This document shows, piece after piece, positions 3,980 to 26,431 of a stretch of DNA of 64,000 nucleotides. Each line of letters opens with the position of its first letter. Within the stretch, counting starts at the first letter, position 1. Made by a program: the position numbers and the translations under genes. Below the pieces are notes generated by a model. The model was given only the letters and a program-made list of their open reading frames with translations, was not told the origin of the DNA and did no database searches. The stretch is taken from positions 186,001-250,000 of the IMG/VR virus record IMGVR_UViG_3300046092_000062. One strand, written 5' to 3'.

Positions 3980-4024
3980 GTATTACTTTTTTTGGTTGAC
4001 CCATAATGAGCGTTCATGTATAAT
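3970..4024 (+). promoter_or_regulatory. early promoter with upstream palindromic box
   Basis: AATACT-TG-AGTATT palindrome, T-tract, TTGACC(3996)-17-TATAAT(4019). Confidence 0.85.
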
Positions 4025-4052: not shown

Positions 4053-4409
4053 ATGAAATTCTTTCAAGAAACTACTGACTACAAAGACAAGATTTCAAAC
4101 GGCATCTACTTGCTGTCAGATGACAAGACACGTATGTTTGCCTATGTTGCACCAGGCAACAACACTGCAAAAGAATTCAAGCGCCCGATTCGCATCGACA
4201 CTCGTGGCCGCAGCTTCAAGCCTGTTACTAATACCTTCAACTATGTGATCCCTGCAGAAGTTGCCCCAGAAGTCCCGCAGTGGATTGTTAAAGGCAGCAA
4301 AGGCGATGAGTACATTGTGCGCAAAGACGGCTTGATGTATTCATGTACATGCAGCGGATTTAAATTTCGCGGTAGCTGCAAGCACGTCACGGAGATCAAA
4401 GGCGCATGA
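4053..4409 (+). CDS. SWIM-type zinc finger protein
   Basis: C-terminal YSCTCSGFKFRGSCKHV (CxC-xn-CxH). Confidence 0.75.
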   Translation: MKFFQETTDYKDKISNGIYLLSDDKTRMFAYVAPGNNTAKEFKRPIRIDTRGRSFKPVTNTFNYVIPAEVAPEVPQWIVKGSKGDEYIVRKDGLMYSCTCSGFKFRGSCKHVTEIKGA

Positions 4410-4615
4410 TTAAACGTCAGTATCATTACTATGGTGGCCGCAACGGCGATGCCTACTTCTGCAACTTTGTTGATGCAGCGGGCGGGCAAGAACACATTCG
4501 TACTGAACTAGCTAAGTGGAAAGCAACAGTTGCTAAAAGCAAAGCCAAATACACCTACAATGTCAAGTTCCACGACGAGCAGTTATACATGTTTTTTAGG
4601 ATCAAGTTTTCATGA
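4406..4615 (+). CDS. LRW-family mini-protein I-1
   Basis: tail FHDEQLYMFFRIKFS. Confidence 0.75.
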   Translation: MIKRQYHYYGGRNGDAYFCNFVDAAGGQEHIRTELAKWKATVAKSKAKYTYNVKFHDEQLYMFFRIKFS

Positions 4616-4863
4616 CAGAAGCGTGGATATTCGTTAATGGACAGAAGGTTCAGATTCCTCAGCATCCTTACCAAGCCAGGGAGTTTAGATGGCATTTGGG
4701 CGCAGAGTATAATTCTGCATTGGAGTGGGAAAATCCCGAGTTTGACAACATAAAAACTTGGTGCGAGCAAACTTGTGTTCCGCATACTTACAGAATGTTT
4801 TTGAGAAGTGTTTGGTTCTTTCGTGAGTCCGATGCCTTATTGTGCAAGTTGAGGTGGGTATGA
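4612..4863 (+). CDS. LRW-family mini-protein I-2
   Basis: WCEQ core; tail FFRESDALLCKLRWV. Confidence 0.85.
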   Translation: MTEAWIFVNGQKVQIPQHPYQAREFRWHLGAEYNSALEWENPEFDNIKTWCEQTCVPHTYRMFLRSVWFFRESDALLCKLRWV

Positions 4864-5090
4864 ACTGGCAGTTTTGGCGTAAGCAATATCGAGTGGCTGT
4901 GACAGAAAATGATTACAATGCTAAGATTGTAAAGCACATGGGCACTACTGGAAAACTCCATATGCAGTTTTTCGACTTTGTTAAGCAAGAGTTCAATGCT
5001 GATCGTGAGTGGAGTTGGAAGACCAGAGAGAATTTCCTAGTGTTTGATAATGAACATGACTACGCTATGTTTCTGTTAAGGATGCTGTGA
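4860..5090 (+). CDS. LRW-family mini-protein I-3
   Basis: start ATG 4860 (ATGA overlap); tail FDNEHDYAMFLLRML. Confidence 0.85.
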   Translation: MNWQFWRKQYRVAVTENDYNAKIVKHMGTTGKLHMQFFDFVKQEFNADREWSWKTRENFLVFDNEHDYAMFLLRML

Positions 5091-5341
5091 TGTTGATCGA
5101 ACTCGACGATGAATATCGTATGATTGGGTACTACATCGCCGTACTAGAAGATCCAATTGACAGCGGGCACGATTTGTGGTATCACGAATCATTCAAAGAC
5201 ACCGATGAATGGTGTGAGCAAACCTTTGGGGCGCAGGACATGTGGGGAGAAAATCCTGCTACAGGGTGGAAGCGTATGCGTAACAGATACTTCTTTACTA
5301 CAGATGCTGCCCGCGGGTTATTTGTATTGAGGTTTACATGA
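5087..5341 (+). CDS. LRW-family mini-protein I-4
   Basis: WCEQTFG core; tail FTTDAARGLFVLRFT. Confidence 0.85.
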   Translation: MMLIELDDEYRMIGYYIAVLEDPIDSGHDLWYHESFKDTDEWCEQTFGAQDMWGENPATGWKRMRNRYFFTTDAARGLFVLRFT

Positions 5342-5559
5342 TTGAAGTAGATATCGATAAAGAAGGCGGATATGGTCGTCACCACTGGTGGGAAAACTTT
5401 CGCGACTATGCTGAGGAACAGGGGTATAATTTCGATAATGCTGAGAATATCACCAAAGCACTTGCAGAATGGAACGCTATTGATAAGGACCCAGATTCCA
5501 CCAAGTTCTACTTTGAAAACGAGCAGGACCACTTGCTGTTTATGTTGAGGTTTACATGA
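5338..5559 (+). CDS. LRW-family mini-protein I-5
   Basis: tail FENEQDHLLFMLRFT. Confidence 0.85.
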   Translation: MIEVDIDKEGGYGRHHWWENFRDYAEEQGYNFDNAENITKALAEWNAIDKDPDSTKFYFENEQDHLLFMLRFT

Positions 5560-5840
5560 AAGTAAAAGACACACTGCAAATTGATTTGATCTACGGCACA
5601 CTCCGTCAACGCCTGCGGGAGTTTGTAGCAGAGACTCCTTGCTTGTATACAAATGACGGAGACGCTGTTAACCTTGTGTGTCATTATTTCCCCTGTTGGC
5701 AGTACAATGGTGCTGCACCGTTTGAAGAAGTTATGCTGTGGTGTGAAGAACATTTCGGCCGTGATTGGATTTGGAGATTTGAAACAATTTTCTTCAAGCA
5801 CGAACGTGATCGTGCAGTATTCTTATTGAGGTGGTCATGA
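5556..5840 (+). CDS. LRW-family mini-protein I-6
   Basis: WCEEHFG core; tail FKHERDRAVFLLRWS. Confidence 0.85.
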   Translation: MKVKDTLQIDLIYGTLRQRLREFVAETPCLYTNDGDAVNLVCHYFPCWQYNGAAPFEEVMLWCEEHFGRDWIWRFETIFFKHERDRAVFLLRWS

Positions 5841-6058
5841 CAACTCTTTACATCTCCGGGGATTACGACCAAAGCCCACTGGCATACAAAAACTTCTATC
5901 GAGCAGTGATAGAACCCAGGTTAATGGAAGTACACCGTGAATCAATTAGCGGAAGTGATCTCCTTAAAGAGTACAATGCACATTGGGATAATACATCTAA
6001 GAGCATTGTGTTTGACACTGAACACGATTTGACAATGTTTATGTTGAGGTGGGCATGA
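5837..6058 (+). CDS. LRW-family mini-protein I-7
   Basis: tail FDTEHDLTMFMLRWA. Confidence 0.85.
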   Translation: MTTLYISGDYDQSPLAYKNFYRAVIEPRLMEVHRESISGSDLLKEYNAHWDNTSKSIVFDTEHDLTMFMLRWA

Positions 6059-6306
6059 TTGTAAAAGAGTATTACCAAAACATTAACTGTAGCAAACCCA
6101 GGGACTACTTTGAGCGTTGGTATGCAGACGTGTGGGCACGACGAATCGGCACAAAGATCGCACAGCCCGGAGTGTTAGCTCGTGTACTCGAAGAAGAAAT
6201 TGCTCAAGTTGGTGCTTATCTCGAGGACAAAGATCGCGGGTACAAATTTGTAGCAACATTCAAAGACGAGCACGACTATACCATGTTTGTATTGAGGTGG
6301 TCATGA
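6055..6306 (+). CDS. LRW-family mini-protein I-8
   Basis: tail FKDEHDYTMFVLRWS. Confidence 0.85.
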   Translation: MIVKEYYQNINCSKPRDYFERWYADVWARRIGTKIAQPGVLARVLEEEIAQVGAYLEDKDRGYKFVATFKDEHDYTMFVLRWS

Positions 6307-6530
6307 AACTACGTGCCGACATTCGTCCATACTTTCAGAAGATTGCTGATTACTATTGGGACAACATTGGTCGTGACTTCTACAACGAAGGGCATCACAT
6401 AACCATTTGGGACTGGCTCAAGCGTGATTACTCTGTGGTTAAGATTGGGCAAATTGGCAGCAAGACTGAGTTATGGGTTACATTTCCAGATGAGCAGCAC
6501 ATGACTATGTTTATGTTGAGGTGGACATGA
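6303..6530 (+). CDS. LRW-family mini-protein I-9
   Basis: true start ATG 6303 (track ORF extended upstream); tail FPDEQHMTMFMLRWT. Confidence 0.85.
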   Translation: MKLRADIRPYFQKIADYYWDNIGRDFYNEGHHITIWDWLKRDYSVVKIGQIGSKTELWVTFPDEQHMTMFMLRWT

Positions 6531-6727
6531 AACAAGAGCTAACTATGCGCATGGATTGCGAATACACTTACATTCCATTTGCCAATAGCCGCACCAGCAT
6601 CGATTGGATAGAAGCACTACTTTGGTGCGAAGAGTTCGAAGGCATTGGACACTTTAGCATGGGAGGACATGGCATTTACTTCGAAAAGGAAAAAGATGCT
6701 ATAATGTTTACATTAATCAACTCATGA
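6527..6727 (+). CDS. LRW-family mini-protein I-10
   Basis: WCEE core; tail FEKEKDAIMFTLINS. Confidence 0.85.
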   Translation: MKQELTMRMDCEYTYIPFANSRTSIDWIEALLWCEEFEGIGHFSMGGHGIYFEKEKDAIMFTLINS

Positions 6728-7005
6728 AAAAGCAATATACAAGAGACTCCCTTATGAAAAAGGCACGTATTGAATCCGACCAGCTAAACACTATCTTCCA
6801 GAAGTGGGCGGCAAACAATGGGTATAAGACCTCAGGACATTGGATTGATCACCTTGATCGACTTAACCTGCGTTACGGCCCTGGCCAAGCGTTTGATCAT
6901 TATGTTTGGTCATGCGGTGGCCGCATTTACACAGAATACAGCAAGCGTTATGCAGACTTCTTTGAAGACGAAGATTTGATAATGTTTACATTAAGGCACC
7001 TATGA
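6724..7005 (+). CDS. LRW-family mini-protein I-11
   Basis: tail FEDEDLIMFTLRHL. Confidence 0.8.
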   Translation: MKKQYTRDSLMKKARIESDQLNTIFQKWAANNGYKTSGHWIDHLDRLNLRYGPGQAFDHYVWSCGGRIYTEYSKRYADFFEDEDLIMFTLRHL

Positions 7006-7187
7006 TAACAACTTTACGAGCATGGTCCAGAGTTAGTGTAAGAGACATTCAACCAGCAGTAGCATGGTGCAGTGAGAATCTTACCCACAATGATTGGGTG
7101 TGCAGTTCGATCCCAAACGACAACGAATTTAGCTTTCGATTCCGTAACGAAAAGATTGCTACAGAGTTTGCACTGAGATTTGCATGA
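7002..7187 (+). CDS. LRW-family mini-protein I-12
   Basis: WCSENL core; tail FRNEKIATEFALRFA. Confidence 0.85.
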   Translation: MITTLRAWSRVSVRDIQPAVAWCSENLTHNDWVCSSIPNDNEFSFRFRNEKIATEFALRFA

Positions 7188-7429
7188 TACGATTAGATCT
7201 TGTTAAAGACTATGCACCTATTCCGATATGGAACAAATTTGTTGGACACCTGCAAGAACAAGTGGGACCACAGGCAGTAACTGACGCTTATGTTAATACC
7301 GCACTAGCTGAGTACTGTGCAGTGTATTATATGGAAGAGGTGGGTAACATATATGAAAGTTCTGTGCTACACTGGATTGAGTTTGAAGATGAAGAATTGT
7401 ACTCTTGGTTTATGTTGAGGTGGGCATGA
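7184..7429 (+). CDS. LRW-family mini-protein I-13
   Basis: tail FEDEELYSWFMLRWA. Confidence 0.85.
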   Translation: MIRLDLVKDYAPIPIWNKFVGHLQEQVGPQAVTDAYVNTALAEYCAVYYMEEVGNIYESSVLHWIEFEDEELYSWFMLRWA

Positions 7430-7683
7430 TTAGCATATTGTTATCAGACAAGGGCAGTACTCCCGAACAAGCATGGTGGTGGAAGTTTTTACACGGCACG
7501 GATAAACGTAGCGGTCCGTCAACTACAGAAGACCGCATTGAAGCTATCAACTTGGAATTGCTAAATTGGTCAGCGCAGCTATGGCGACACGAGCAAACGG
7601 CTACGCGCCACAATGCCCGAAGCGCATACATTGATTTCTACGACGAACAAGCGTACACTTGGTTTGTGCCGAGGTGGTCATGA
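7426..7683 (+). CDS. LRW-family mini-protein I-14
   Basis: tail FYDEQAYTWFVPRWS (Pro at the conserved Leu). Confidence 0.85.
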   Translation: MISILLSDKGSTPEQAWWWKFLHGTDKRSGPSTTEDRIEAINLELLNWSAQLWRHEQTATRHNARSAYIDFYDEQAYTWFVPRWS

Positions 7684-7874
7684 TTGAAATTAAAATCAGC
7701 AAGAAACTTCGTAATGTATACGGGGAAAGTGGTACTCAGGTTGCTTGGAAATGGTGCTTAGATAACTTTGGCCCACCGGAACCAAACGGTAAGCGTTGGG
7801 CATGGGACACTATGCGCACATTTTGGTTTCATAAAGAAGAAGATGCTACACTGTTTGCACTGAGGTGGTTATGA
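7680..7874 (+). CDS. LRW-family mini-protein I-15
   Basis: WCLDNFGP core; tail FHKEEDATLFALRWL. Confidence 0.85.
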   Translation: MIEIKISKKLRNVYGESGTQVAWKWCLDNFGPPEPNGKRWAWDTMRTFWFHKEEDATLFALRWL

Positions 7875-8098
7875 CAACAATTTCAATGAGCCATAATGTT
7901 CTAACAAATGCAGGGTGGATCCGCATACCGCTTGACGCTGAAAAAGTTATGCAAGCTCGACGACATGAAAGTTATTTTGAATTTTTTGAAACTGCACACA
8001 TTCGCAACCGGTATGCAATCTTTAGTGTGCCCAATGGATACGATTTCTTTTTTCGAAATAAAAAAGATGCTACAGAGTTTGTGTTGAGGTGGGCATGA
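7871..8098 (+). CDS. LRW-family mini-protein I-16
   Basis: tail FRNKKDATEFVLRWA. Confidence 0.85.
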   Translation: MTTISMSHNVLTNAGWIRIPLDAEKVMQARRHESYFEFFETAHIRNRYAIFSVPNGYDFFFRNKKDATEFVLRWA

Positions 8099-8385
8099 CT
8101 AAAGAAGAATGGACGAAATGGAATCGCAAGATACAACTAAACAGCATCTACGGTTTAAATCTCTGTAAAGAAATAGTGGCACCAAGGGATCAAGCACTAA
8201 CAGCGATACAAAACGCATGGGCTCAATGGCACTGTGATATCAAACACAACGTAACAGACTTTGGGTTTAAAGACTGGTGCAAGCGTGAGCATGGGTTTGA
8301 ATACCAACAGAATAGTGACCGGAGTGTTGTCACTACTGTACTTGACGAGCAAAAGTATGCTTGGTTCTTACTAAAGTGGGCATGA
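8095..8385 (+). CDS. LRW-family mini-protein I-17 with N-terminal PolB motif-B-like fragment
   Basis: N-term NRKIQLNSIYG; tail VLDEQKYAWFLLKWA. Confidence 0.85.
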   Translation: MTKEEWTKWNRKIQLNSIYGLNLCKEIVAPRDQALTAIQNAWAQWHCDIKHNVTDFGFKDWCKREHGFEYQQNSDRSVVTTVLDEQKYAWFLLKWA

Positions 8386-8388
8386 AAG

Positions 8389-8598
8389 ATGCAAGTAGAG
8401 AAAATGTTCCATCACACTGTGCCTAGCTCTAATGTGTGCATACAAGCCAGTAAATGGTTGCTGGAAGAGCGTGGATACAAGTTCGTCATTGAAGCCGAAA
8501 CAGAAGGACGCGGCAACAGTTCTAGATACACTGGCAGATACACATTCAAGTTCTTGTGTGAGCAAGAGTATATGTGGTTTCTAATGAGGTGGGCATGA
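8389..8598 (+). CDS. LRW-family mini-protein I-18 (close paralogue of 23627)
   Basis: tail RYTGRYTFKFLCEQEYMWFLMRWA. Confidence 0.85.
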   Translation: MQVEKMFHHTVPSSNVCIQASKWLLEERGYKFVIEAETEGRGNSSRYTGRYTFKFLCEQEYMWFLMRWA

Positions 8599-8599
8599 C

Positions 8600-8779
8600 A
8601 TGTTAACATACCGTATGATTGACTGGGTCAACATTCAACAACGCATGATTGAAGGCGGACTCAGTGATATTCCCAATGGGCGATTTCATGACAGCTACCG
8701 TAAGGACGATTACTTGTACTTTATGGTTGAGTTCGACACACCCGAGGATGAAATGATGTTTTTATTGAGGTGGGCATGA
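8600..8779 (+). CDS. LRW-family mini-protein I-19 (59 aa, missing from ORF track)
   Basis: hand translation MLTYRMIDWVNIQQ...FDTPEDEMMFLLRWA. Confidence 0.8.
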   Translation: MLTYRMIDWVNIQQRMIEGGLSDIPNGRFHDSYRKDDYLYFMVEFDTPEDEMMFLLRWA

Positions 8780-9000
8780 ACTCAAAACAAAGACGACGTG
8801 ATCGCAGAGCATGGAAACACGACATTGTGTTTACACACGAACAAGTTTATGAACGTGGTTACAACGACATGTGGGACTGGTGTGTTACTGTTTTTAATAA
8901 CAGGGGCAACAAGTGGAGAGAGCCGTATGGTCCTCCGGGCGTTAGATGGCAGTTTACCAAGCCAGAATACGCTGTGATGTTTGCACTACGCTGGCAATAA
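8776..9000 (+). CDS. LRW-family mini-protein I-20
   Basis: DWCVTVF core; tail FTKPEYAVMFALRWQ. Confidence 0.85.
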   Translation: MNSKQRRRDRRAWKHDIVFTHEQVYERGYNDMWDWCVTVFNNRGNKWREPYGPPGVRWQFTKPEYAVMFALRWQ

Positions 9001-9002
9001 AG

Positions 9003-9058
9003 TAGTACTTGAGTATTACATTTTTTTGGTTGACCCAAAATGGTTTTGGTTGTATAAT
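9003..9058 (+). promoter_or_regulatory. early promoter with palindromic box (near-copy of 3970 element)
   Basis: TAGTACTTGAGTATTAC, T-tract, TTGACC(9030)-17-TATAAT(9053). Confidence 0.85.
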
Positions 9059-16979: not shown

Positions 16980-17162
16980 ATGAACTCTATCACAATCAAT
17001 GGTGCCGATAAGGCACTCGAAGCAGGCGGCTGGTGCAGAAAACAATTTGGTATTAAGGGATGGACAATAGACTTGAACAGTATGTTGGGCAACAATCCCA
17101 CGTATAGGTTTGATTTCTCTAGTCCCGCTGATGCTACACTATTTGCATTAAAATGGCGGTAA
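16980..17162 (+). CDS. LRW-family mini-protein II-1
   Basis: WCRKQFG; tail FSSPADATLFALKWR. Confidence 0.85.
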   Translation: MNSITINGADKALEAGGWCRKQFGIKGWTIDLNSMLGNNPTYRFDFSSPADATLFALKWR

Positions 17163-17410
17163 CTTTAGTCGTTCATGAATTTACACTAGGTGACGTAGAT
17201 GATCCCGAAATCTACGCAGCCGTGCCCTTGTATGAATGGCAATTGAGTGATGCCGGTAAATGGGTTATGGAAAATGCTATTGAAACTCCCCAGTGGGGCA
17301 GAATCAATGATCATCTCACGTACTCACTTCGTTACAGAGTAACTGCAAAGCTCAAAGATGAGGATGCAACCTTTTTCAAGTTAAAGTATGATCACACTAA
17401 CCGACGCTGA
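17153..17410 (+). CDS. LRW-family mini-protein II-2
   Basis: tail LKDEDATFFKLKY. Confidence 0.8.
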   Translation: MAVTLVVHEFTLGDVDDPEIYAAVPLYEWQLSDAGKWVMENAIETPQWGRINDHLTYSLRYRVTAKLKDEDATFFKLKYDHTNRR

Positions 17411-17615
17411 GTGGCGTAATATTAGAAATCAAATCAGAATTGAATACGCCGACAAGCCCAGTGTTTGGCTATTGCGCTCTGTAATGAAGCGTGAGTTAGG
17501 ATTTACTGACCGCCATCATCAAGTATACAGAGAACAAACAGGTTACATCACTACTGTCTACTTGGACTTCTTTAATGATGCAGCAGAAACAATGTTTAGA
17601 TTGAAGTACTTATAA
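17388..17615 (+). CDS. LRW-family mini-protein II-3
   Basis: tail FFNDAAETMFRLKYL. Confidence 0.8.
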   Translation: MITLTDAEWRNIRNQIRIEYADKPSVWLLRSVMKRELGFTDRHHQVYREQTGYITTVYLDFFNDAAETMFRLKYL

Positions 17616-17831
17616 TTGGAATTCATTGCACGTATACTGCCCAAGTTAATTGCTGGTGTCCTAAGCATTATGGATGCCAGTCGCTTGCGGGATAAAGTAT
17701 ACCAGCAACAACACGAGCATGAGTTGATGTGGACTGCACTAGATGATATCGCACGTATGCACCCAGATCATCCGTCAGGAAAAATGGCAAAGAAAACACT
17801 AGATGAAGTTACTACACGCTACGGTAGGTAG
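17616..17831 (+). CDS. hypothetical protein (non-LRW)
   Basis: 71-aa ORF abutting previous stop. Confidence 0.65.
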   Translation: MEFIARILPKLIAGVLSIMDASRLRDKVYQQQHEHELMWTALDDIARMHPDHPSGKMAKKTLDEVTTRYGR

Positions 17832-18219
17832 GTTTCAGGCATGGCGCCATGCACGTTACCTCAAAAAGAAGGGCTGGACCCAGCGCCAGTTTGACCTCAT
17901 CAACGATCCTGATTTTTGCGCACGTGGCAGCAGTATTCGTAAAGATGTCTATCGCGGCTATCCCTACTTAATCTCGTTTGACGACACAGTACCAATGGAA
18001 CGGCGATATGGTCAAGGATGGATCACCGTAGTTGATAATATGACAGCGTGGTGCGAAGCGAATGTTACAGGCAAATGGAGAGAAGATATCCTTGCAGTCG
18101 ACAAGAGTTGGGACGACGAATGGACGCAAGGGTGCATGGGCCTAAGCCACAACATTCTATTCTTTGCATTTAACAATGAGCAAGATGCAGTAATGTTTAG
18201 TCTATACTGGAGTGTGTAA
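17803..18219 (+). CDS. LRW-family protein II-4 with long N-terminal extension
   Basis: AWCEAN core; tail FNNEQDAVMFSLYWSV; start uncertain. Confidence 0.8.
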   Translation: MKLLHATVGRFQAWRHARYLKKKGWTQRQFDLINDPDFCARGSSIRKDVYRGYPYLISFDDTVPMERRYGQGWITVVDNMTAWCEANVTGKWREDILAVDKSWDDEWTQGCMGLSHNILFFAFNNEQDAVMFSLYWSV

Positions 18220-18437
18220 TGAACATCGAATTCAAACATCGCCCGGACCGATACTACGAGTGGGAAATGTACTACAGTCCACAGGGCCCCGAAATGGGCG
18301 AAGTATACGGTTGGTGCTGGGAAACATTCGGTCACCCAGGACTAGCATTAGGTAATGGAACTTGGGATAACCACGGCGGATGGATTAAGTTTCGCAGAGA
18401 AGAAGATATGACTATGTTTATGTTGAGGTGGAGCTAA
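18219..18437 (+). CDS. LRW-family mini-protein II-5
   Basis: WCWETFG; tail FRREEDMTMFMLRWS. Confidence 0.85.
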   Translation: MNIEFKHRPDRYYEWEMYYSPQGPEMGEVYGWCWETFGHPGLALGNGTWDNHGGWIKFRREEDMTMFMLRWS

Positions 18438-18703
18438 TGGAATTATTTTATGGTGGCGGCGGACGCAGTAACCCGGACTTTATACACAAGGTGCGGGTTA
18501 GCAAAAAACGTGCAGGTGATGTTAGTCCACTGATGAAGTGGTGCGACGATTACCCAACTGGTGATAAGGGCTACTTTAAACGCTACTACATCGATTGGCG
18601 TGGTGACACAAAGAGCTGGGATAGTGACTATGTTACATTCCAATTTGAATGGGAACAAGCTGCTATCATGTTTGCTCTAAGTTTTGCGGACAGCGTATGC
18701 TAA
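18437..18703 (+). CDS. LRW-family mini-protein II-6
   Basis: KWCDD; tail FEWEQAAIMFALSF. Confidence 0.8.
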   Translation: MELFYGGGGRSNPDFIHKVRVSKKRAGDVSPLMKWCDDYPTGDKGYFKRYYIDWRGDTKSWDSDYVTFQFEWEQAAIMFALSFADSVC

Positions 18704-18981
18704 CAACAGTAAGAATTTGGGTACTAGATCACAATGTTATCCCCGACCAATCCGATGTAGACTACTGCAAGAACAACGGCATACAACTAGACGCCCAGCA
18801 AGGTGAGCATCAGCGTATCGAAACTGGCAGCGGGCAGGTCTATCACTACCGCACCTCACCCGGGGTCATAAAGCTAACCACATTTGACGAGAAAAGCGAA
18901 TGTATGTTACAATTACGCTACGCAGGTAGAATCCATCTAATGCAACAAATTTACACCGAGTCTGTAACACATTCGTATTAA
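18697..18981 (+). CDS. divergent LRW-like protein II-7
   Basis: FDEKSECMLQLRY; similar to 2936. Confidence 0.65.
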   Translation: MLTTVRIWVLDHNVIPDQSDVDYCKNNGIQLDAQQGEHQRIETGSGQVYHYRTSPGVIKLTTFDEKSECMLQLRYAGRIHLMQQIYTESVTHSY

Positions 18982-19310
18982 TGAAAGTTCGTCTTAAAAA
19001 TGGCCGCATTGGAGAGCATCGCCTTAAGTGGGACAACAACCCAATGGGCATTGCGCCATTGCTAATAGGATCGGAGACTGTGGAATTGGATATCACTGAA
19101 CGAATTTACAACGGGCCCGACTGCTACCCGTGGCGCAAGACGTTTGCACTTTGGCCAGTTAAAACAATAGGTGGTAGCCGCATTTGGTTACGCACTGTTT
19201 ACAAACAACGATTCTGGGCAGTGTGGGGCAAAGGCTTTCACATGGAGCCCTGGGTTGAATATGCAACACTATTTGAGATTTTAAAACATGAACCTAAATC
19301 ATCTATCTGA
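18981..19310 (+). CDS. Trp-rich hypothetical protein (non-LRW)
   Basis: WRKTFALWPVKT.GG..IWL..VY. Confidence 0.75.
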   Translation: MKVRLKNGRIGEHRLKWDNNPMGIAPLLIGSETVELDITERIYNGPDCYPWRKTFALWPVKTIGGSRIWLRTVYKQRFWAVWGKGFHMEPWVEYATLFEILKHEPKSSI

Positions 19311-19764
19311 CGTAGAGCTGCTACGCTACTTGGATTTGACTAGCACTGATCCATTGGTTATTCGTTTGATCAACATGCTGTCTGCACCTAACGGTGGGCT
19401 TGTTGGTGATTTAGTGGAAGCAGGCATGGATCCTAACACATGGGTCTTTACAGACGATCACCAAGACTACTACCCCGGAGATTACATCACCCACTTGCAA
19501 AAGATGGTTGCCTACGCAGAAGATGACCGTGCGGTAGCCGAAATGGATTTAGCGGATGCTCGTGAAGAACTTGATAAGTTAAGTCGACGCACCGTTACAG
19601 AACTTCTAGTAGATGCGCAGCGGGCAATTGACTCTGCAAAATCCAATCACCTTTACGCAGTTAGAGAAGCTGAAAAAGCTCACGAAGTAATTGACAAGGT
19701 ACAAGCAGAGAATAGACATCTCAAAGAGCAATTGGGCATGTGGAATATTTTAGGGACAGAGTAA
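19288..19764 (+). CDS. coiled-coil hypothetical protein
   Basis: heptad-like C-terminal half. Confidence 0.75.
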   Translation: MNLNHLSDVELLRYLDLTSTDPLVIRLINMLSAPNGGLVGDLVEAGMDPNTWVFTDDHQDYYPGDYITHLQKMVAYAEDDRAVAEMDLADAREELDKLSRRTVTELLVDAQRAIDSAKSNHLYAVREAEKAHEVIDKVQAENRHLKEQLGMWNILGTE

Positions 19765-19765
19765 C

Positions 19766-20032
19766 ATGGACAACGTTATTCACAGCAACAAATATTTCCG
19801 ATTAACTAAATGGCGCCATCGCAAAAGCGACAAGGTGCATTATCGCGTTGAGATGACATACAGTTGGTTGAATCTGGACCAAGAAGCAGGGGAGAAAAGT
19901 TTTCCTGAGCAAGTTCGCGATGTAATCGACCCAACTCGTTGTCGTGCTGGGCAAGCTGGCAACCACTGGAAATACCGTAACTTAGAAGAAGCTACAAAAG
20001 CCTATACATTTTTAGTAATGAAATTCTCATGA
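19766..20032 (+). CDS. LRW-family mini-protein II-8 (divergent)
   Basis: tail YRNLEEATKAYTFLVMKFS. Confidence 0.7.
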   Translation: MDNVIHSNKYFRLTKWRHRKSDKVHYRVEMTYSWLNLDQEAGEKSFPEQVRDVIDPTRCRAGQAGNHWKYRNLEEATKAYTFLVMKFS

Positions 20033-20310
20033 GTTATAAACTTAAACTAGCACACAAGCATCACGATCAATTAGATCAAATTGAAGCATGGCTCAACGCT
20101 AACGTTGGCCCTGGTAGCAAACGACATGCAAACAACACCTGGCTCGGTGCCGAAGATTGGTACTGCTATGAAGAAGCACTAGTTCCGGGCAGCGAGGAAG
20201 AGGAAGAAGAGTATTACGACAACGATGACAATCTTGAAGATATTTCAGATTTGATCTTTGTATTCCGCCGCGAAAGCGATCTGTTAATGTTTAGTTTGAA
20301 ATGGGCATAG
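20029..20310 (+). CDS. LRW-family mini-protein II-9 with acidic insertion
   Basis: SEEEEEEYYDNDDNLED; tail FRRESDLLMFSLKWA; TAG stop. Confidence 0.85.
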   Translation: MSYKLKLAHKHHDQLDQIEAWLNANVGPGSKRHANNTWLGAEDWYCYEEALVPGSEEEEEEYYDNDDNLEDISDLIFVFRRESDLLMFSLKWA

Positions 20311-20311
20311 C

Positions 20312-20668
20312 ATGTCTAGTCCTTTTAAACTCACAGATCTCCCCAACAACACTTGGTCAGTAACATGGACCGAGAATAACTTTGCACATAATGCTAAACA
20401 GCGAGACAAGTTAGTAGATATTCTGTTTAGCGAAATTGGATGCCGCGACGTTGGCCTAGGCATTAAACTAAACAATGGCGAACTAGAAACACTGTGGATT
20501 GGTGAAAAAGAGTATTTTCAACGGTCCGACATAGCCCACGGATGGGAAGACATGTATGTTGTTCGTGGTGTTGTGTTCATTCACGAACACGAAGCTAGGG
20601 AGTTTCATCAATTGATGGAAAGTCGATTGGCTTGGTACTACTTAAAGCAAGGTGCAGCAGTTGCTTGA
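20312..20668 (+). CDS. divergent LRW-like protein II-10
   Basis: FIHEHEAREF followed by a helical extension. Confidence 0.65.
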   Translation: MSSPFKLTDLPNNTWSVTWTENNFAHNAKQRDKLVDILFSEIGCRDVGLGIKLNNGELETLWIGEKEYFQRSDIAHGWEDMYVVRGVVFIHEHEAREFHQLMESRLAWYYLKQGAAVA

Positions 20669-20879
20669 AATTCCATACCCAACCCTAATGAATGGCAGTC
20701 GCACGTTCTCTATGGAAACTCTACAAAAGTGGCTTGACGCACACTTTCCTCAAGAACGTTCCTGCATTGTCCGTGTTGCTATTGTTAACAAAGGGCCTGG
20801 GAGGTACGGCGACGAACGATGGGCGATTCGTTTTTATCGGGATGAAGATGCAACACTGTTTGGATTGTTATGGCAGTAA
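20652..20879 (+). CDS. LRW-family mini-protein II-11
   Basis: tail FYRDEDATLFGLLWQ; start GTG 20652 or ATG 20688. Confidence 0.8.
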   Translation: MQQLLEIPYPTLMNGSRTFSMETLQKWLDAHFPQERSCIVRVAIVNKGPGRYGDERWAIRFYRDEDATLFGLLWQ

Positions 20880-21127
20880 CCTATAAAACTAATCCGGGAT
20901 TCCCAGGTGTTAATTTTCCCGTGTTGCACCGTGTTGTCTATGCACACACCATCGATGGTGTCCCAGCACAATGGCAAATCAGCTACAAGGATTATATAGT
21001 CAATGAATGGCTTAAAGCAAACACACGCCATCCTTACTACCACAGTCCCGGGTATCTTCGTGAAAAGTTCATTGAGTTTGAATGTGATGAAGAAGCAGTG
21101 CTATTCGCACTAAAGTGGGCAAAGTAA
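20870..21127 (+). CDS. LRW-family mini-protein II-12
   Basis: tail FECDEEAVLFALKWAK. Confidence 0.85.
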   Translation: MAVTYKTNPGFPGVNFPVLHRVVYAHTIDGVPAQWQISYKDYIVNEWLKANTRHPYYHSPGYLREKFIEFECDEEAVLFALKWAK

Positions 21128-21357
21128 TGTACAGCAAGACTCACCGATTTTTTAAATTCAAACACGTTCCCAAGGACTTTATATGGGGCAGTGAGGAAAT
21201 TGACCTGTGCCGCCTGCACATTGGTGACAACCGTATCACGATGCCGCTTGTGGACCGCGAATGGTTTAGTTCGCCCGATGGTGTATGGATTCGACATGAT
21301 TGTCTGGATAACGAAATCATAACTTGGTTTGCACTGAAAGCAAGCAATGAAGTTTGA
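21127..21357 (+). CDS. LRW-family mini-protein II-13
   Basis: tail LDNEIITWFALKA. Confidence 0.75.
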   Translation: MYSKTHRFFKFKHVPKDFIWGSEEIDLCRLHIGDNRITMPLVDREWFSSPDGVWIRHDCLDNEIITWFALKASNEV

Positions 21358-21607
21358 ACTGCTAGAAGGGCGCATACACGGAGCCCGTTACTACACAGTT
21401 AGACCAGACTTTAATTGGTGGCTTTCGGGCAGCTTAAACAATACAAATGCCACCTGGCGTGATATGTTAGAATGGTGTGTAGAAGTATTCGGTCCTAGCG
21501 CAGAAATGGGTGTGTGGGAACCCGGTGCTCGTTGGTATGCTAACAATGCAAAGTTTTGGTTTCGTAATGCAGAAGATAGGACAGCGTTTTTGCTGAGATG
21601 GTCATGA
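21347..21607 (+). CDS. LRW-family mini-protein II-14
   Basis: EWCVEVFGP; tail FRNAEDRTAFLLRWS. Confidence 0.85.
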   Translation: MKFELLEGRIHGARYYTVRPDFNWWLSGSLNNTNATWRDMLEWCVEVFGPSAEMGVWEPGARWYANNAKFWFRNAEDRTAFLLRWS

Positions 21608-21837
21608 AACCAGACCTAGTCCAATTTTACTGCGAACGAGATCCCTATTACGCTAAATCACGTGAGTACTACATGATGAACGTAAATCATTACGAAACTC
21701 CTTATTACCTTTGGATGATACAGGAATATCGCACTGTGCTGTTAAACAAACAGGGTAGCTGGAGCGACAGGGCTGAACAGCATTGGGGCTTTATTAATGA
21801 ATCGGATAGAACAATTTTTATGTTGAGATGGTCATGA
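21604..21837 (+). CDS. LRW-family mini-protein II-15
   Basis: tail FINESDRTIFMLRWS. Confidence 0.85.
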   Translation: MKPDLVQFYCERDPYYAKSREYYMMNVNHYETPYYLWMIQEYRTVLLNKQGSWSDRAEQHWGFINESDRTIFMLRWS

Positions 21838-22064
21838 CAACTACTGTTGAATTTGGTAAAGATCGTTATCACTTACAGGGTGAAATGGAAGAATGGTGCG
21901 AGCACAATATTGGGTCTAATCCTCGTTATAGCAACCACGTTTGGTCCAAGCCAGTTGAGTGGGAAGGGTTAGGCACATGGTGCATGGCTAGTGCGTTTGG
22001 CACAACATTTTTCTACTTTAAACATCGCAAAGATGCAACCTTCTTTGCATTGAAATGGAAATAA
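21834..22064 (+). CDS. LRW-family mini-protein II-16
   Basis: EWCEHNIG; tail FKHRKDATFFALKWK. Confidence 0.85.
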   Translation: MTTTVEFGKDRYHLQGEMEEWCEHNIGSNPRYSNHVWSKPVEWEGLGTWCMASAFGTTFFYFKHRKDATFFALKWK

Positions 22065-22065
22065 T

Positions 22066-22428
22066 ATGGATGATCGGAATCTTTGGCACCTGCTATGTGA
22101 TTGGGTAAAATTTGGTAAGTTTATAGAATGGAAAGAATGGTTTTACTGGACCATTGTGCCTGGCACTAGCATTGGGGTCATTTGGCCAAATGGCCCAATT
22201 TCTCTGGGTTGTGATCCTGATGGCGAAGAGGTAATCGTCGACTCCGCTGATCCAAACGATCACTATCGCCCATGGTTAGAAGAGCATGTCGGGCGTCAGG
22301 GCATTGATTGGGAATGGAGAATGGGAACTTTTGGATTTTGGACAGATGAAATAGATACTCTAGACATTAAGTTTCGAGTGGGAAAGACAAAGTATGCTAC
22401 AATAGCAGCATTGATGTGGGGCCAATGA
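22066..22428 (+). CDS. LRW-family protein II-17, extended N-terminus
   Basis: WLEEHVG core; tail KYATIAALMWGQ. Confidence 0.75.
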   Translation: MDDRNLWHLLCDWVKFGKFIEWKEWFYWTIVPGTSIGVIWPNGPISLGCDPDGEEVIVDSADPNDHYRPWLEEHVGRQGIDWEWRMGTFGFWTDEIDTLDIKFRVGKTKYATIAALMWGQ

Positions 22429-22628
22429 GAACCAAAACTACAAGAGAACTATATCCGTACCATGTGCGCTTTAAGCGTACAGGAGATTGGTATGGCAATG
22501 ATGGTACTTGGTATCAAATTAGCACATGGCTTCGAGAACACTTTGGGCAGAATTGGGAATATCTTGACAGTATGTTTATGTTCTCTAAGGAAGAACACAA
22601 AATGCTTTTTATAATGAGATGGCTATGA
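22425..22628 (+). CDS. LRW-family mini-protein II-18
   Basis: WLREHFG; tail FSKEEHKMLFIMRWL. Confidence 0.85.
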   Translation: MRTKTTRELYPYHVRFKRTGDWYGNDGTWYQISTWLREHFGQNWEYLDSMFMFSKEEHKMLFIMRWL

Positions 22629-23044
22629 CAAAACGCAACACCGTAGTAATGGATATCGAAACCACAACAGCAGTAATGCCGCGTGGGTCTTCTTCTGTTT
22701 TTCAGGGCATCACAGGTGGAATACATCCTGGAGAAATGATGATTTATGCCGGGGGCAGACAAACTGGCAAGTCCACACTGTCTTACCATATATTAAAGAG
22801 CAGATACTACGAAATGGGCATCAAGGAACAAATCCAGACGTTGGATACGTTTACACTAGATGGTGCTACATGGTACACTGTACACTGTCGTCCTTCGACT
22901 ATTAGTGGGTGGGTGCAAGAGCAAGACTCCGATATGTGGTGCCGACACTACAACACAGGCGCACTGCGAGTTGAATACCCCACGTTTAACAACTACAACA
23001 TACACGAAGAACTGTATTCAATGTTATTGTTGAAATGGTCATGA
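22625..23044 (+). CDS. LRW-family protein II-19 with DnaB-like Walker A fragment
   Basis: GGIHPGEMMIYAGGRQTGKST; tail IHEELYSMLLLKWS. Confidence 0.8.
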   Translation: MTKRNTVVMDIETTTAVMPRGSSSVFQGITGGIHPGEMMIYAGGRQTGKSTLSYHILKSRYYEMGIKEQIQTLDTFTLDGATWYTVHCRPSTISGWVQEQDSDMWCRHYNTGALRVEYPTFNNYNIHEELYSMLLLKWS

Positions 23045-23406
23045 AAATCTTAAAACAAACTGTAGCAGCTAAGACTTGCACCCTCAAAGCCAATTGGACT
23101 ATTGATCGCTCAGCAGACAATAGCTTTACGATCGGTGATGATACGTGGCAAGAGGTTGGGGCAGCACTACGAAAAGAGATTGATGAAGAAATTGTTAACA
23201 ATATTAGAAGGCATGAGCTTATGTTAAAAGGATGGGTCAAGGCCCCGTTTACTAGCGACAAGTTTGCTACACCAGGCAACCACCAGATAGCAGAAGTTAC
23301 TGCATGGATTCACATGAACACCACGGCGCAATATCAAATCTTCGGCCGAGAGTTCTGGTTCTCAAGCAAGGAAGACTTAACACTGTTTGTACTGAGGTGG
23401 GCATGA
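23041..23406 (+). CDS. LRW-family protein II-20 with major-capsid (gp23-like) fragment
   Basis: ILKQTVAAKT..LKANWT...AAL.KEIDEEIV; tail FSSKEDLTLFVLRWA. Confidence 0.8.
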   Translation: MKILKQTVAAKTCTLKANWTIDRSADNSFTIGDDTWQEVGAALRKEIDEEIVNNIRRHELMLKGWVKAPFTSDKFATPGNHQIAEVTAWIHMNTTAQYQIFGREFWFSSKEDLTLFVLRWA

Positions 23407-23630
23407 GCTATACACTGTACCCCGACGAAGACATTCTAAAGAAGCAACGATATATCGTTAAGTACAGAGGGAGCCTGTATGGGCACCGCGACGAGATGCT
23501 TGCCTGGTGTGTAGAACAGTTTGGTCCACATTCACATGCCTACAAAAATCCACGATGGAGTGAAAACTGGGACCGATTCTGCTTTAAGAATGAAAGCGAC
23601 ATGATGCTGTTTATGTTGAGATGGTCATGA
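23403..23630 (+). CDS. LRW-family mini-protein II-21
   Basis: WCVEQFGP; tail FKNESDMMLFMLRWS. Confidence 0.85.
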   Translation: MSYTLYPDEDILKKQRYIVKYRGSLYGHRDEMLAWCVEQFGPHSHAYKNPRWSENWDRFCFKNESDMMLFMLRWS

Positions 23631-23893
23631 CAGATACAGATAAATTAGAGTGGTCAGATATTTGCCGCCATGAGCATAAGTGCAAGGGTGATGAATTGTT
23701 ATATCACACTGTGCCTAGCTATAGTGTATATGTCAGGGCATCTAAATGGTTGCGGGAAGAGCGTGGGTACAAGTTTATCAGCGTAGAGGGTGAAACGGAA
23801 GAACATAGTGCTGGTTGGCGTTACACGGGTAGGTATACTTTTAAGTTCTTGTGCGAGCAAGAGTATATGTGGTTTAAGTTGAGGTGGTCGTGA
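23627..23893 (+). CDS. LRW-family mini-protein II-22 (close paralogue of 8389)
   Basis: tail RYTGRYTFKFLCEQEYMWFKLRWS. Confidence 0.85.
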   Translation: MTDTDKLEWSDICRHEHKCKGDELLYHTVPSYSVYVRASKWLREERGYKFISVEGETEEHSAGWRYTGRYTFKFLCEQEYMWFKLRWS

Positions 23894-24180
23894 TGAGTAG
23901 ACCAGGTTTTAATTCACAAGAGTGGTTTCGGGCCAAGCATGACCCAAAACATGATATGGTACATGGCGATAGACTGTATTACGTTGAGCCAGGTTGCGAA
24001 TACGGGTTCAAAGAAGATGACGGATATGTGTGGAATCGCATAAGCTGTAGCTATTGGTTCGGGGACTGGATTGAAGAAAATGGCGGTGAGGGACGTTGGC
24101 GAGCATACGGCGGCAGGCATCGTGCTATCTACATTGTGCGCGAAGACCTACTAGCGTTTATTAAGTTAAAGTGGCTATGA
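23893..24180 (+). CDS. LRW-family mini-protein II-23
   Basis: DWIEENG; tail VREDLLAFIKLKWL. Confidence 0.8.
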   Translation: MSRPGFNSQEWFRAKHDPKHDMVHGDRLYYVEPGCEYGFKEDDGYVWNRISCSYWFGDWIEENGGEGRWRAYGGRHRAIYIVREDLLAFIKLKWL

Positions 24181-24377
24181 AATACTGGAACAAAGACAAA
24201 CGTGTTCGGCAAAACCATTGGTATACAATTACTTCGCCTACATGGTGGTCGTATGCTGATACTAAACTAGAGTTGCAGAGATTTGACAGTCCGGGTAAGT
24301 TTTATCTATATTACGGCAGTAGAACAATTTGGTTTGAGCGTGAACAAGACGCAGTATTTTTTAGATTGAAGATGTGA
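24177..24377 (+). CDS. LRW-family mini-protein II-24
   Basis: tail FEREQDAVFFRLKM. Confidence 0.8.
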   Translation: MKYWNKDKRVRQNHWYTITSPTWWSYADTKLELQRFDSPGKFYLYYGSRTIWFEREQDAVFFRLKM

Positions 24378-24378
24378 T

Positions 24379-24570
24379 ATGAAGCAATATGGCCTAGCGA
24401 TTGAACGTTGGGGGCATCCACGTAAGGCAACTATATGGCATTGGCTTAAACAAAACTTTGGCCCCGAGGGTGATCGTTGGGGCACACAGTATGACTACGG
24501 ACTGGACAATCTCTGGATGAATGAAGATGTTTACATCATGTATAAATTAAAATGGGAACAACATGACTGA
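24379..24570 (+). CDS. LRW-family mini-protein II-25
   Basis: WLKQNFGP; tail MNEDVYIMYKLKW. Confidence 0.8.
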   Translation: MKQYGLAIERWGHPRKATIWHWLKQNFGPEGDRWGTQYDYGLDNLWMNEDVYIMYKLKWEQHD

Positions 24571-24961: not shown

Positions 24962-24998
24962 TATTTCACGCTACGTACTGCCAACACAGTCCGAGCAA

Positions 24999-25175: not shown

Positions 25176-25185
25176 TAAGTACAGT

Positions 25186-26394: not shown

Positions 26395-26397
26395 TAG

Positions 26398-26426
26398 TTG
26401 CGCTAAATGGCATCATATGCTATAAT
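26398..26426 (+). promoter_or_regulatory. sigma70-type promoter
   Basis: TTGCGC-17-TATAAT with extended TG. Confidence 0.7.
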
Positions 26427-26431
26427 ACAGT

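What the first reader, a model, noticed from the sequence alone, without database searches (positions are those of the whole stretch)
4406..9000. Array I: 20 consecutive translationally coupled paralogues in 4.6 kb
Seen: every ORF from 4406 to 9000 ends in a variant of F-x-x-E-x-D-x-x-x-F-x-L-R-W, including a 59-aa member (8600-8779) missing from the ORF track. Most neighbours overlap by ATGA/GTGA. Two body types alternate: WC.E.FG...W (4612, 5087, 5556, 6527, 7002, 7680, 8776) and W..F...L.E[YW].A (5338, 5837, 7184, 7426), suggesting a common tail recombined onto different bodies. The array follows a SWIM-finger gene under an early promoter, implying early expression (inference).
Basis: seen in the sequence. 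Interest (0 to 1): 0.88.

Follow-up and report, generated by a model that had tools for sequence, protein, structure and literature searches.

The report
Coupled paralogue array in jumbo phage
A giant uncultured phage carries one operon of 20 back-to-back copies (at least 42 in 64 kb) of an uncharacterised mini-protein whose last codons also form the ribosome-binding site of the next gene, and related phages gain and lose these genes as exact cassettes.

Summary
Window 4406-9000 holds 20 consecutive + strand genes of 59-96 aa. All end in register with F..E.D...F.LRW-like tails, and 17 of 19 junctions are 4-nt ATGA/GTGA overlaps. They belong to one protein family. It has at least 42 members in the window and about 4,000 50%-identity clusters in metagenomes, with no Pfam, NCBIfam, PHROG or PDB match. 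AlphaFold gives a confident beta-alpha-beta-beta-alpha fold for both "body types". The tail is the last core helix, not a separable module.

New points:
- The tail codons TTG AGG TGG nnA TGA carry the Shine-Dalgarno sequence and start of the next gene. AGG is 2.7% of Arg codons elsewhere but 18 of 25 at this position. Array-terminal genes use CGC or AAA instead.
- A relative with about 90% nucleotide identity differs by whole-gene indels whose breakpoints lie exactly at these junctions.
- Orthologues are under purifying selection (dN/dS about 0.1).
- A SWIM-like leader gene behind a consensus sigma-70 promoter precedes such arrays in several divergent phages.

The idea that a common tail was recombined onto different bodies is not supported, because tails track their bodies. 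Function is unknown. My best guess is an early-expressed arsenal of host-binding mini-proteins.

The parts
3996..4024 (+). Sigma-70-type promoter (TTGACC-17-TATAAT) heading the operon
   Evidence: It is one of 11 exact TTGACN-N16-18-TATAAT matches, all on the + strand, against 0.13 expected. They share an extended TTGACCCATAATG motif.
4053..4409 (+). Leader gene of 118 aa with a C-terminal SWIM-like CxCx(n)CxH motif. Its stop overlaps the first array ATG.
   Evidence: Pfam SWIM scores 15.3 bits, below the 19.6 cut-off. Homologues of 38-58% identity precede arrays in L008, L045, L063, L060 and L136.
4406..4615 (+). Family member 1 (69 aa), tail ...FFRIKFS
   Evidence: It is 96% identical to its L005 orthologue, with dN/dS 0.05.
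4612..4863 (+). Member 2 (83 aa, WC type). Absent from relative L005.
   Evidence: The indel runs exactly from ATGA to ATGA.
4860..5090 (+). Member 3 (76 aa)
   Evidence: dN/dS 0.08, dS 1.0.
5087..5341 (+). Member 4 (83-84 aa, WC type; start GTG 5087 or ATG 5090). Absent from L005.
5338..5559 (+). Member 5 (73 aa, extra-helix type)
   Evidence: dN/dS 0.08, dS 1.9.
5556..5840 (+). Member 6 (94 aa, WC type)
5837..6058 (+). Member 7 (73 aa)
   Evidence: dN/dS 0.42, the highest.
6055..6306 (+). Member 8 (83 aa)
6303..6530 (+). Member 9 (75 aa). The longer 137-aa ORF from TTG 6117 is an artefact of the open frame.
6527..6727 (+). Member 10 (66 aa, WC type, degenerate tail ...FTLINS, so no SD for the next gene)
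6724..7005 (+). Member 11 (93 aa)
7002..7187 (+). Member 12 (61 aa, WC type)
   Evidence: Only 49% identity to the gene at that position in L005.
7184..7429 (+). Member 13 (81 aa, extra-helix type). This is the AlphaFold model with pLDDT 90.5.
7426..7683 (+). Member 14 (85 aa). Absent from L005; the breakpoint lies in the shared tail/junction sequence.
7680..7874 (+). Member 15 (64 aa, WC type, closest to the family consensus). This is the AlphaFold model with pLDDT 87.5.
7871..8098 (+). Member 16 (75 aa). A different family member occupies this position in L005.
8095..8385 (+). Member 17 (96 aa)
8389..8598 (+). Member 18 (69 aa). It is 64% identical to member 23627-23893 of the second array and absent from L005.
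8600..8779 (+).
8776..9000 (+). Member 20 (74 aa). It is the terminal gene: TAA stop, no coupled downstream gene, and the tail Arg is CGC rather than AGG. Absent from L005.
9002..9058 (+). Weak AU-rich hairpin plus a T7 run (9002-9027), then the next consensus promoter (9030-9058). This marks the end of the transcription unit.
   Evidence: The hairpin is only -5.9 kcal/mol, so its role as a terminator is not established.
16980..26910 (+). At least 22 further members of the same family in several smaller coupled runs, interspersed with unrelated ORFs

Best explanation
Array I is a single operon of about 5 kb in a T4-related jumbo phage of about 321 kb from a metagenome. It is read by the host RNA polymerase. 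A consensus sigma-70 promoter (3996-4024) drives a SWIM-like leader gene and then 20 paralogues of one uncharacterised mini-protein family. Each protein is one compact beta-alpha-beta-beta-alpha domain. The conserved positions (the central Trp, F.F, E.D, F.L[R/K]W) are mostly hydrophobic and I read them as the core of the fold; everything else varies strongly, including net charge. I could not inspect model coordinates to confirm burial.

The last helix ends one residue before the stop. Its codons (TTG AGG TGG nnA TGA) are at the same time the Shine-Dalgarno sequence and start codon of the next cistron. Every cassette therefore brings the translation signal for whatever follows it, and ribosomes are passed down the array.

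The same conserved 3' sequence marks where whole cassettes are inserted, deleted or replaced between related phages. The array evolves by cassette turnover, while each retained paralogue stays under purifying selection.

Inferred, not shown: the proteins are made early in infection and act as a diversified set of small binders of host proteins (takeover or counter-defence).

My confidence by part is about 0.9 for operon and family, about 0.85 for the dual-coding tail, about 0.7 for junction-mediated cassette turnover, and about 0.4 for the host-binder function.
For: One family: profile iteration finds 42 members, all on the + strand. The alignment shows a near-invariant central W, two F and L.

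Fold: AlphaFold gives pLDDT 87.5 (pTM 0.72) and pLDDT 90.5 (pTM 0.75) with the same topology for both body types.

Spread: 3,986 cluster representatives at E<=1e-3, all small, with the domain at the C-terminus. Exactly one residue follows the Trp in 124/185 sequences.

Real genes: dN/dS is 0.05-0.42 (median about 0.1) against the L005 orthologues, similar to flanking genes.

Dual coding: the tail Arg is AGG 18, AGA 5, CGC 2, while AGG is 2.7% of Arg codons in large genes and 7% in the family bodies (binomial p 2e-23). Both CGC cases are array-terminal genes with TAA stops. Over the window and the relatives L001, L008 and L015 (the pooled table), AGG is used at 32/50 coupled junctions against 1/12 uncoupled (Fisher p 7e-4). 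GAGGT lies 5-7 nt before 13 of the 20 starts.

Operon: the consensus promoters at 3996 and 9030 bracket the array.

Cassette turnover: L005/L006 (flanks about 90% nt identity, ligase 98% aa) have 16 members instead of 20. Five window genes are absent, one is replaced and one is extra. For four of the five absent genes the breakpoints were aligned and lie at the ATGA/tail. More distant relatives have arrays of different content and position.

Diversified surface: pI runs from 4.3 to 10.0.

A peptide-presenting variant: one member carries the conserved segment of the T4-type major capsid protein.
Against: There is no functional evidence of any kind. No homologue has a known function or a solved structure.

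Early timing rests only on promoter consensus.

Breakpoints at gene boundaries could reflect selection, since only in-register indels survive, rather than a recombination mechanism.

dN/dS of about 0.1 shows no sign of the positive selection often seen in arms-race genes. That measure is crude and averaged over the whole gene.

Four of the 20 starts have a weak or no SD sequence.
Confidence: 0.55

Rival explanations
1. One reading: a mobile common tail module has been recombined onto unrelated bodies, so bodies and tails have separate histories.
For: The tail is far more conserved than the rest. Crossovers do fall within tails. The L005 orthologue of 7184-7429 ends with the final residue and junction of window gene 7426-7683. 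A Mantel test among the window paralogues found no body-tail correlation.
Against: Both body types share one predicted fold, with the tail as its last helix, and align on the same Trp. Tails track bodies across phages far above chance. WC bodies associate with a tail subtype. The Mantel null is explained by saturation at 20-30% identity.
Confidence: 0.08
2. The proteins are small nucleic-acid-binding regulators (RNA or DNA) rather than binders of host proteins. For example, they could modulate host or phage transcripts early in infection.
For: The topology is a ferredoxin-like or RRM-like alpha+beta sandwich lacking the last strand. The weak Foldseek neighbours include RRM, KH and ferredoxin-like proteins. 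Some members are basic, with pI up to 10.
Against: No structural match is significant (E>0.2, TM<0.5). Net charge is centred on zero and many members are strongly acidic. No conserved basic patch is visible in the alignments.
Confidence: 0.15
3. The paralogues are interchangeable partner or specificity subunits of the SWIM-like leader protein. That would make one machine with many adaptors rather than independent effectors.
For: A SWIM-like gene directly precedes arrays in at least five further divergent loci with 38-58% identity, while the array contents turn over. The conserved face of the domain could be a common docking surface.
Against: Most of the 103 array-bearing loci show no SWIM homologue in the DNA held, although the flanks are short. 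The window's second set of 22 members is not preceded by one. The conserved residues look like core positions rather than surface ones.
Confidence: 0.15
4. The shared tail is only a nucleotide-level signal (SD plus start for coupling). On this view the ORFs are not homologous proteins, or they are non-functional products of tandem amplification.
For: The LRW codons do encode the SD sequence, and codon choice there is clearly driven by it.
Against: L[R/K]W is kept with non-SD codons (CGC, AAA) at uncoupled ends. Homology extends over about 55 residues upstream, including the central Trp. The fold predictions are confident. Purifying selection acts on every orthologue pair. Paralogues are old, at 25-40% identity, not recent amplicons.
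Confidence: 0.02

Closest known systems
Early 'host-takeover' clusters of small ORFs in large lytic phages (T4 early regions; SPO1 host-takeover module; the small-ORF region of jumbo phage PA5oct). T4 and SPO1 are from general knowledge.
   Same: Dense same-strand runs of very small genes behind strong sigma-70-type promoters, in a T4-related genome. The clamp loader is 57% identical to the PA5oct group.
   Different: Those clusters consist of mostly unrelated genes; here 20 neighbours are paralogues of one family. The family profile finds nothing in the first 50 kb of PA5oct or in PHROGs.
Tandem multigene families and 'gene accordions' of large eukaryotic DNA viruses such as the ASFV MGFs and poxvirus host-range genes (from general knowledge)
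   Same: Many diverged tandem paralogues in a variable genome region, with copy-number differences between close relatives.
   Different: This is a bacterial virus with 60-95-aa proteins. It is polycistronic with translational coupling, and the paralogues are ancient rather than recently amplified.
Integron gene-cassette arrays
   Same: One promoter at the head, a string of short cassettes, and gain or loss of exact cassettes at a repeated junction.
   Different: There is no room for attC sites, because the junctions are 4-nt overlaps. No integrase was seen among the genes examined. The cassettes are paralogues, and the repeated junction is coding sequence plus SD.
Anti-CRISPR / anti-defence loci marked by a conserved associated gene (acr-aca)
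   Same: Small, fast-turning-over proteins clustered next to a conserved marker gene. Here the marker is the SWIM-like leader.
   Different: Acr proteins in a locus are usually unrelated to each other. No inhibition of any defence system has been shown here, and the marker is not an HTH regulator.
Ferredoxin-like / RRM alpha+beta sandwich folds
   Same: Beta-alpha-beta-beta-alpha order of elements, with two helices packed on a small sheet.
   Different: There is no significant Foldseek match (best E 0.2, TM<0.45), the final strand is lacking, and there is no sequence similarity.

Membership tests
Any curated protein family (Pfam-A 2025, NCBIfam 20, PHROGs v4) | Score above the family threshold or a significant E-value | tested here: not met
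   For Pfam, 10 window members and 10 external members gave no hit better than E 0.002, and all were unrelated and below their cut-offs. For NCBIfam, 0 of 42 matched. For PHROGs, none matched the family domain; the only hits are to a capsid-protein fragment in the N-terminus of a few members.
Proteins of solved structure | Sequence-profile or fold match to a PDB entry | tested here: not met
   The profile against PDB sequences gave a best E of 0.77. Foldseek with both models gave a best E of 0.2-1.7 and TM<=0.5. The BFVD matches are all uncharacterised proteins of uncultured phages.
Single homologous family produced by duplication and divergence | All members recognised by one profile, a shared fold, and tail co-inherited with body | tested here: met
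Translationally coupled operon | Stop/start overlap with an SD sequence inside the upstream ORF at the proper spacing | tested here: met
   17/19 junctions are ATGA/GTGA. GAGGT lies 5-7 nt upstream of 13/20 starts. The AGG codon bias is tied to coupled junctions. Actual coupling of translation was not measurable here.
SWIM zinc finger (PF04434), leader gene 4053-4409 | CxCx(n)CxH motif and a score above the gathering threshold | tested here: inconclusive
   The motif C-T-C-x9-C-K-H is visible. Pfam gives 15.3 bits against a cut-off of 19.6, E 0.015.
Sigma-70 (host RNA polymerase) early transcription unit | -35/-10 consensus promoter upstream and no phage-specific late motif | tested here: met
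   There is a TTGACC-17-TATAAT match at 3996-4024. The window holds 11 exact matches against 0.13 expected and no TATAAATA. Timing of expression is not testable with these tools.
Integron cassette array | attC recombination sites between cassettes and an IntI integrase | tested here: not met
   The junctions are 4-nt overlaps with no intergenic DNA. No recombinase appeared among the larger ORFs scanned; that scan was not exhaustive.
Anti-defence (Acr-like) proteins | Demonstrated inhibition of a host defence system | not testable with these tools
   Only circumstantial evidence exists: small size, presumed early expression, variability and cassette turnover.

The most novel reading that the evidence does not exclude
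The family is a self-coupling, plug-and-play cassette system. Each gene ends in a short coding sequence that is at once part of the fold's core, the ribosome-binding site of the next gene, and the homology used to insert or excise cassettes. This lets jumbo phages reshuffle, without loss of expression, an arsenal of mini-proteins on a previously unseen scaffold. These proteins present variable surfaces or grafted peptides (for example the Gol-like capsid segment) to host targets such as translation factors or defence sensors.
Probability: 0.3. Interest if true: 0.8.

Novelty: new variant of a known kind. Interest (0 to 1): 0.62.

Why it matters
Tandem multigene families are well known in large eukaryotic viruses but are rarely documented at this scale in phages. 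Here at least 42 paralogues occupy about 15% of a 64-kb stretch.

The family is large (about 4,000 clusters at 50% identity) and apparently confined to uncultured phages. It is absent from curated libraries and has no structural relative, so it is a sizeable unannotated part of phage 'dark matter'.

The tail shows a clear case of overlapping constraints: core helix, Shine-Dalgarno sequence and cassette boundary. This explains why the motif is so conserved. It also warns against reading such motifs purely as protein signals.

If the proteins are host-directed binders, the arrays would be a rich source of small inhibitors. They would also be a model for how phages keep a changeable arsenal expressed.

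Tried and rejected
- Megablast of the array against GenBank phages found no match.
- tblastn of an external member (P0002) against GenBank phages found nothing. BLAST has little power at this level of divergence.
I used the ligase and a junction DNA pattern instead.
- The search for homologous proteins with A2 returned only 23 unnamed 'hypothetical' proteins, mostly orthologues of one member.
- The look-up of encoding contigs for an orthologue gave only contigs of 0.9-1.5 kb.
- The Mantel test of body against tail similarity among the paralogues gave r about 0 and was uninformative because of saturation. I replaced it with the cross-phage congruence test.
- The hairpins before the promoters are too weak to call terminators.
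- The family profile against the first 50 kb of the nearest cultured relative, PA5oct, gave no hit. The rest of that genome was not scanned.
- A genome-contig scan with a two-junction pattern gave only two short MAG contigs binned as Flavobacterium and Bacteroidetes. This is a weak host clue and sits poorly with the strong SD and sigma-70 signals.
- Four literature searches were run. The three aimed at phage paralogue arrays found no description of this family. The fourth was the Gol/Lit search used for the side observation.

Full report
**What is there**

Window 4406-9000 contains 20 consecutive + strand genes of 59-96 aa. In all 20 the last 15 residues align in register with F..E.D...F.LRWx, with F 19/20, second F 19/20, L 17, R 17, E 15, W 13 and D 11. 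Of the 19 internal junctions, 17 are 4-nt overlaps (16 ATGA, 1 GTGA), and the other two are gaps of 3 and 1 nt. The stop of the upstream gene also overlaps the first ATG. The 59-aa gene at 8600-8779 is real. A profile built from the 20 recovers them all plus 22 further + strand ORFs between 16956 and 26910, and nothing on the - strand. The window therefore holds at least 42 members. Three more ORFs have family-like endings but fall below threshold.

**Genomic setting**

The ligase next to the array identifies the window as part of IMG/VR contig IMGVR_UViG_3300046092_000062, 320,767 bp (L004, window position = L004 position - 579). The phage encodes:
- a T4-type clamp loader (phrog_168, 8e-78), at most 57% identical to the Pseudomonas jumbo phage PA5oct group;
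- NAMPT and a ClpB-like AAA+ protein;
- a ligase no more than 36% identical to any GenBank phage.

About 92% of the window is covered by + strand ORFs. There are 11 exact TTGACN-N16-18-TATAAT matches, all on the + strand, against 0.13 expected. One lies at 3996-4024, just before the 118-aa leader gene (ATG 4053). Another lies at 9030-9058, just after the array. No T4-type late motif is present. Array I is thus one sigma-70-type transcription unit of about 5 kb: promoter, leader gene, then 20 paralogues. The small hairpins before the promoters are too weak to call terminators. Early expression is inferred from the promoter type only.

The leader has a visible CxCx9CxH motif but scores below the Pfam SWIM threshold (15.3 against 19.6 bits). 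Its homologues (38-58% identity) directly precede arrays in at least five other divergent viral contigs.

**One family, one fold**

The 42 sequences align on a near-invariant central Trp, the motif W[C/L].E.FG. After it come a second aromatic residue, an F.F strand and the E.D...F.L[R/K]W helix.

AlphaFold models, using the paralogue alignments, are confident. Gene 7680-7874 gives pLDDT 87.5 and pTM 0.72 with order beta-alpha-beta-beta-alpha. The 'tail' is therefore the last helix of the domain. The conserved positions are mostly hydrophobic and I take them to be core residues, but I could not inspect model coordinates.

The rest is hypervariable. Most detectable pairs are 25-40% identical. 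pI ranges from 4.3 to 10.0, and Trp content is about 5%.

No curated family matches: Pfam, NCBIfam and PHROGs are all negative. No PDB sequence or fold matches. The only structural neighbours are uncharacterised proteins of uncultured phages.

An exhaustive profile search of 1.84 billion representatives finds 3,986 clusters at E<=1e-3. All are small, with the domain at the C-terminus, and a few are two-domain fusions. In 124 of 185 sequences examined, exactly one residue follows the Trp.

**Why the tail is so conserved: dual coding**

The typical 3' end is TTG AGG TGG nnA TGA. This places GAGGTGG 5-7 nt before the overlapping ATG of the next gene. GAGGT is present before 13 of the 20 starts.

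At the tail Arg position the codons are AGG 18, AGA 5 and CGC 2. AGG is only 2.7% of Arg codons in the phage's large genes and 7% in the family bodies (binomial p 2e-23). Both CGC cases (8776-9000 and 24999-25175) are array-terminal genes with TAA stops and no coupled successor. Uncoupled ends otherwise use Lys AAA or AAG.

Over the window and the relatives L001, L008 and L015 (the pooled table), AGG is used at 32 of 50 coupled junctions and at 1 of 12 uncoupled ones (Fisher p 7e-4). L[R/K]W is retained even where the SD sequence is not needed. The motif is therefore under both protein-level and mRNA-level constraint.

**Evolution**

Relatives L005 and L006 have about 90% nt identity in the flanks and a 98% identical ligase. 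They carry 16 members instead of 20.
- Window genes 4612, 5090, 7426, 8389 and 8776 are absent.
- Gene 7871 is replaced by a different member.
- The counterpart of 7002 is only 49% identical.
- One extra member is present.

For four of the five absent genes (4612, 5090, 7426, 8389), alignments show the L005 sequence switching from the left flank to the right flank exactly at the ATGA or within the shared tail.

More distant relatives differ completely:
- L015 (ligase 74%) has no array upstream of the ligase. It has 17 profile-detected members downstream in one array that mixes relatives of window arrays I and II.
- L008 (68%) has six members that are not clearly orthologous.
- L007 (70%) has none within 10 kb.

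A junction DNA pattern retrieves at least 117 IMG/VR stretches. Of these, 103 contain family ORFs, in arrays of up to 17.

Orthologue pairs show dN/dS of 0.05-0.42 (median about 0.1), like the flanking genes. dS is heterogeneous, 0.32-1.9 against 0.11-0.84 in the flanks, which suggests allele replacement of single cassettes.

Among the window paralogues, body and tail similarities are uncorrelated. At this divergence the test has no power.

Across phages, the tail of a homologue is most similar to the tail of the same window gene that best matches its body. This held in 20/25 cases (L005) and 7/26 cases (distant phages with clear body matches), with a top-3 rank in 13/26. About 0.6 and 1.9 would be expected by chance.

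WC-type bodies also associate with one tail subtype in the window (p=0.005, post hoc).

Tails therefore descend with their bodies. The prediction that array order and content vary is borne out.

**Function**

Nothing shows what the proteins do. The following features are most simply read as a diversified set of early host-directed binders for takeover or counter-defence, at about 0.4 confidence:
- a conserved core with hypervariable surface and charge;
- a presumed early operon;
- very high copy number;
- cassette turnover with purifying selection on each retained copy;
- a conserved marker gene.

One member outside the finding (24563-24961) supports a peptide-presenting scaffold. Its N-terminus matches Pfam Gp23 above threshold and aligns to T4 gp23 residues of about 95-118. 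An external homologue aligns to residues 95-125 at 52% identity. This is the highly conserved segment that, as I recall it, contains the Gol peptide, which binds EF-Tu and triggers Lit. The review read here confirms a 29-residue Gol region as the most conserved part of gp23, but does not give its coordinates (PMC3014915).

The rivals are nucleic-acid-binding regulators, adaptor subunits of the SWIM-like protein, a purely nucleotide-level signal, and junk amplification. They are weighed in the rival section; the last two are refuted by the data.

**Verdict**

This is a real and unusual feature: a large, translationally self-coupling cassette array of an uncharacterised, widespread phage mini-protein family with no structural relative. 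I class it as a new variant of a known kind, namely tandem multigene families or early accessory-gene clusters of large viruses. Its function remains open.

Noticed in passing
window 24563-24961: This family member's N-terminal ~30 residues match the T4-type major capsid protein. Pfam Gp23 scores 27.2 bits against a 24.4 cut-off, and the match aligns to T4 gp23 residues ~95-118. 6 of 140 external homologues match the major-head-protein family in their N-terminus. I recall this segment as the Gol region (EF-Tu/Lit), but those coordinates were not verified.
   Followed up: partly
window 1515-1589: A tRNA with anticodon CUA (amber suppressor, called 'Pyl' by ARAGORN) sits directly after a consensus promoter at 1478-1506. 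TAG ends only 4 of 144 + strand ORFs in the window, which may indicate TAG read-through or recoding.
   Followed up: partly
window 1478, 3185, 3996, 9030, 16945, 28026, 40953, 41192, 44362, 57448, 58278: Eleven exact sigma-70 consensus promoters lie here, all on the + strand. Several share an extended TTGACCCATAATG...TATAAT form and a T-rich upstream element, which looks like a phage-specific early promoter class.
   Followed up: partly
window 8389-8598 and 23627-23893: This is the only close paralogue pair (64% aa identity over 67 residues), and it links the two arrays. The array-I copy is absent from relative L005, so it was probably gained by inter-array or inter-phage transfer.
   Followed up: partly
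L045:10708-11058(-), L063:919-1260, L008:6890-7231, L060:5295-5633, L136:4799-5128: Homologues of the SWIM-like leader gene (38-58% identity) lie immediately upstream of family arrays in divergent viral contigs. In L045 the leader's stop overlaps an ATG (ATGA) at the head of the array. Leader plus array appears to be a conserved architecture.
   Followed up: partly
proteins P0007, P0008, P0011, P0020: Database homologues with two family domains in one polypeptide. They are either true fusions of neighbouring cassettes or read-through of a lost stop.
   Followed up: no
window 19766-20032, 22619-23044, 23884-24180: These ORFs have family-like endings (...FLVMKFS, ...LLLKWS, ...FIKLKWL) but fell below the profile threshold. 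They are probably further divergent members, so the true count may be about 45.
   Followed up: no
window 59-1462, 38596-39513, 58527-60818: The phage encodes a nicotinamide phosphoribosyltransferase, a T4-type clamp loader (57% identical to the PA5oct group) and a ClpB/Hsp100-like double AAA+ protein. The last is unusual for a phage.
   Followed up: partly
L137, L138 (genome contigs): The only hits of a two-junction pattern in species-representative genomes are short MAG contigs binned as Flavobacterium and Bacteroidetes. These may be mis-binned phage DNA. As a host clue this conflicts with the strong SD and sigma-70 signals.
   Followed up: no
window 15946-16500: This 184-aa ORF has no orthologue in the otherwise collinear relative L005. 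It is another indel between the two phages, outside the arrays.
   Followed up: no
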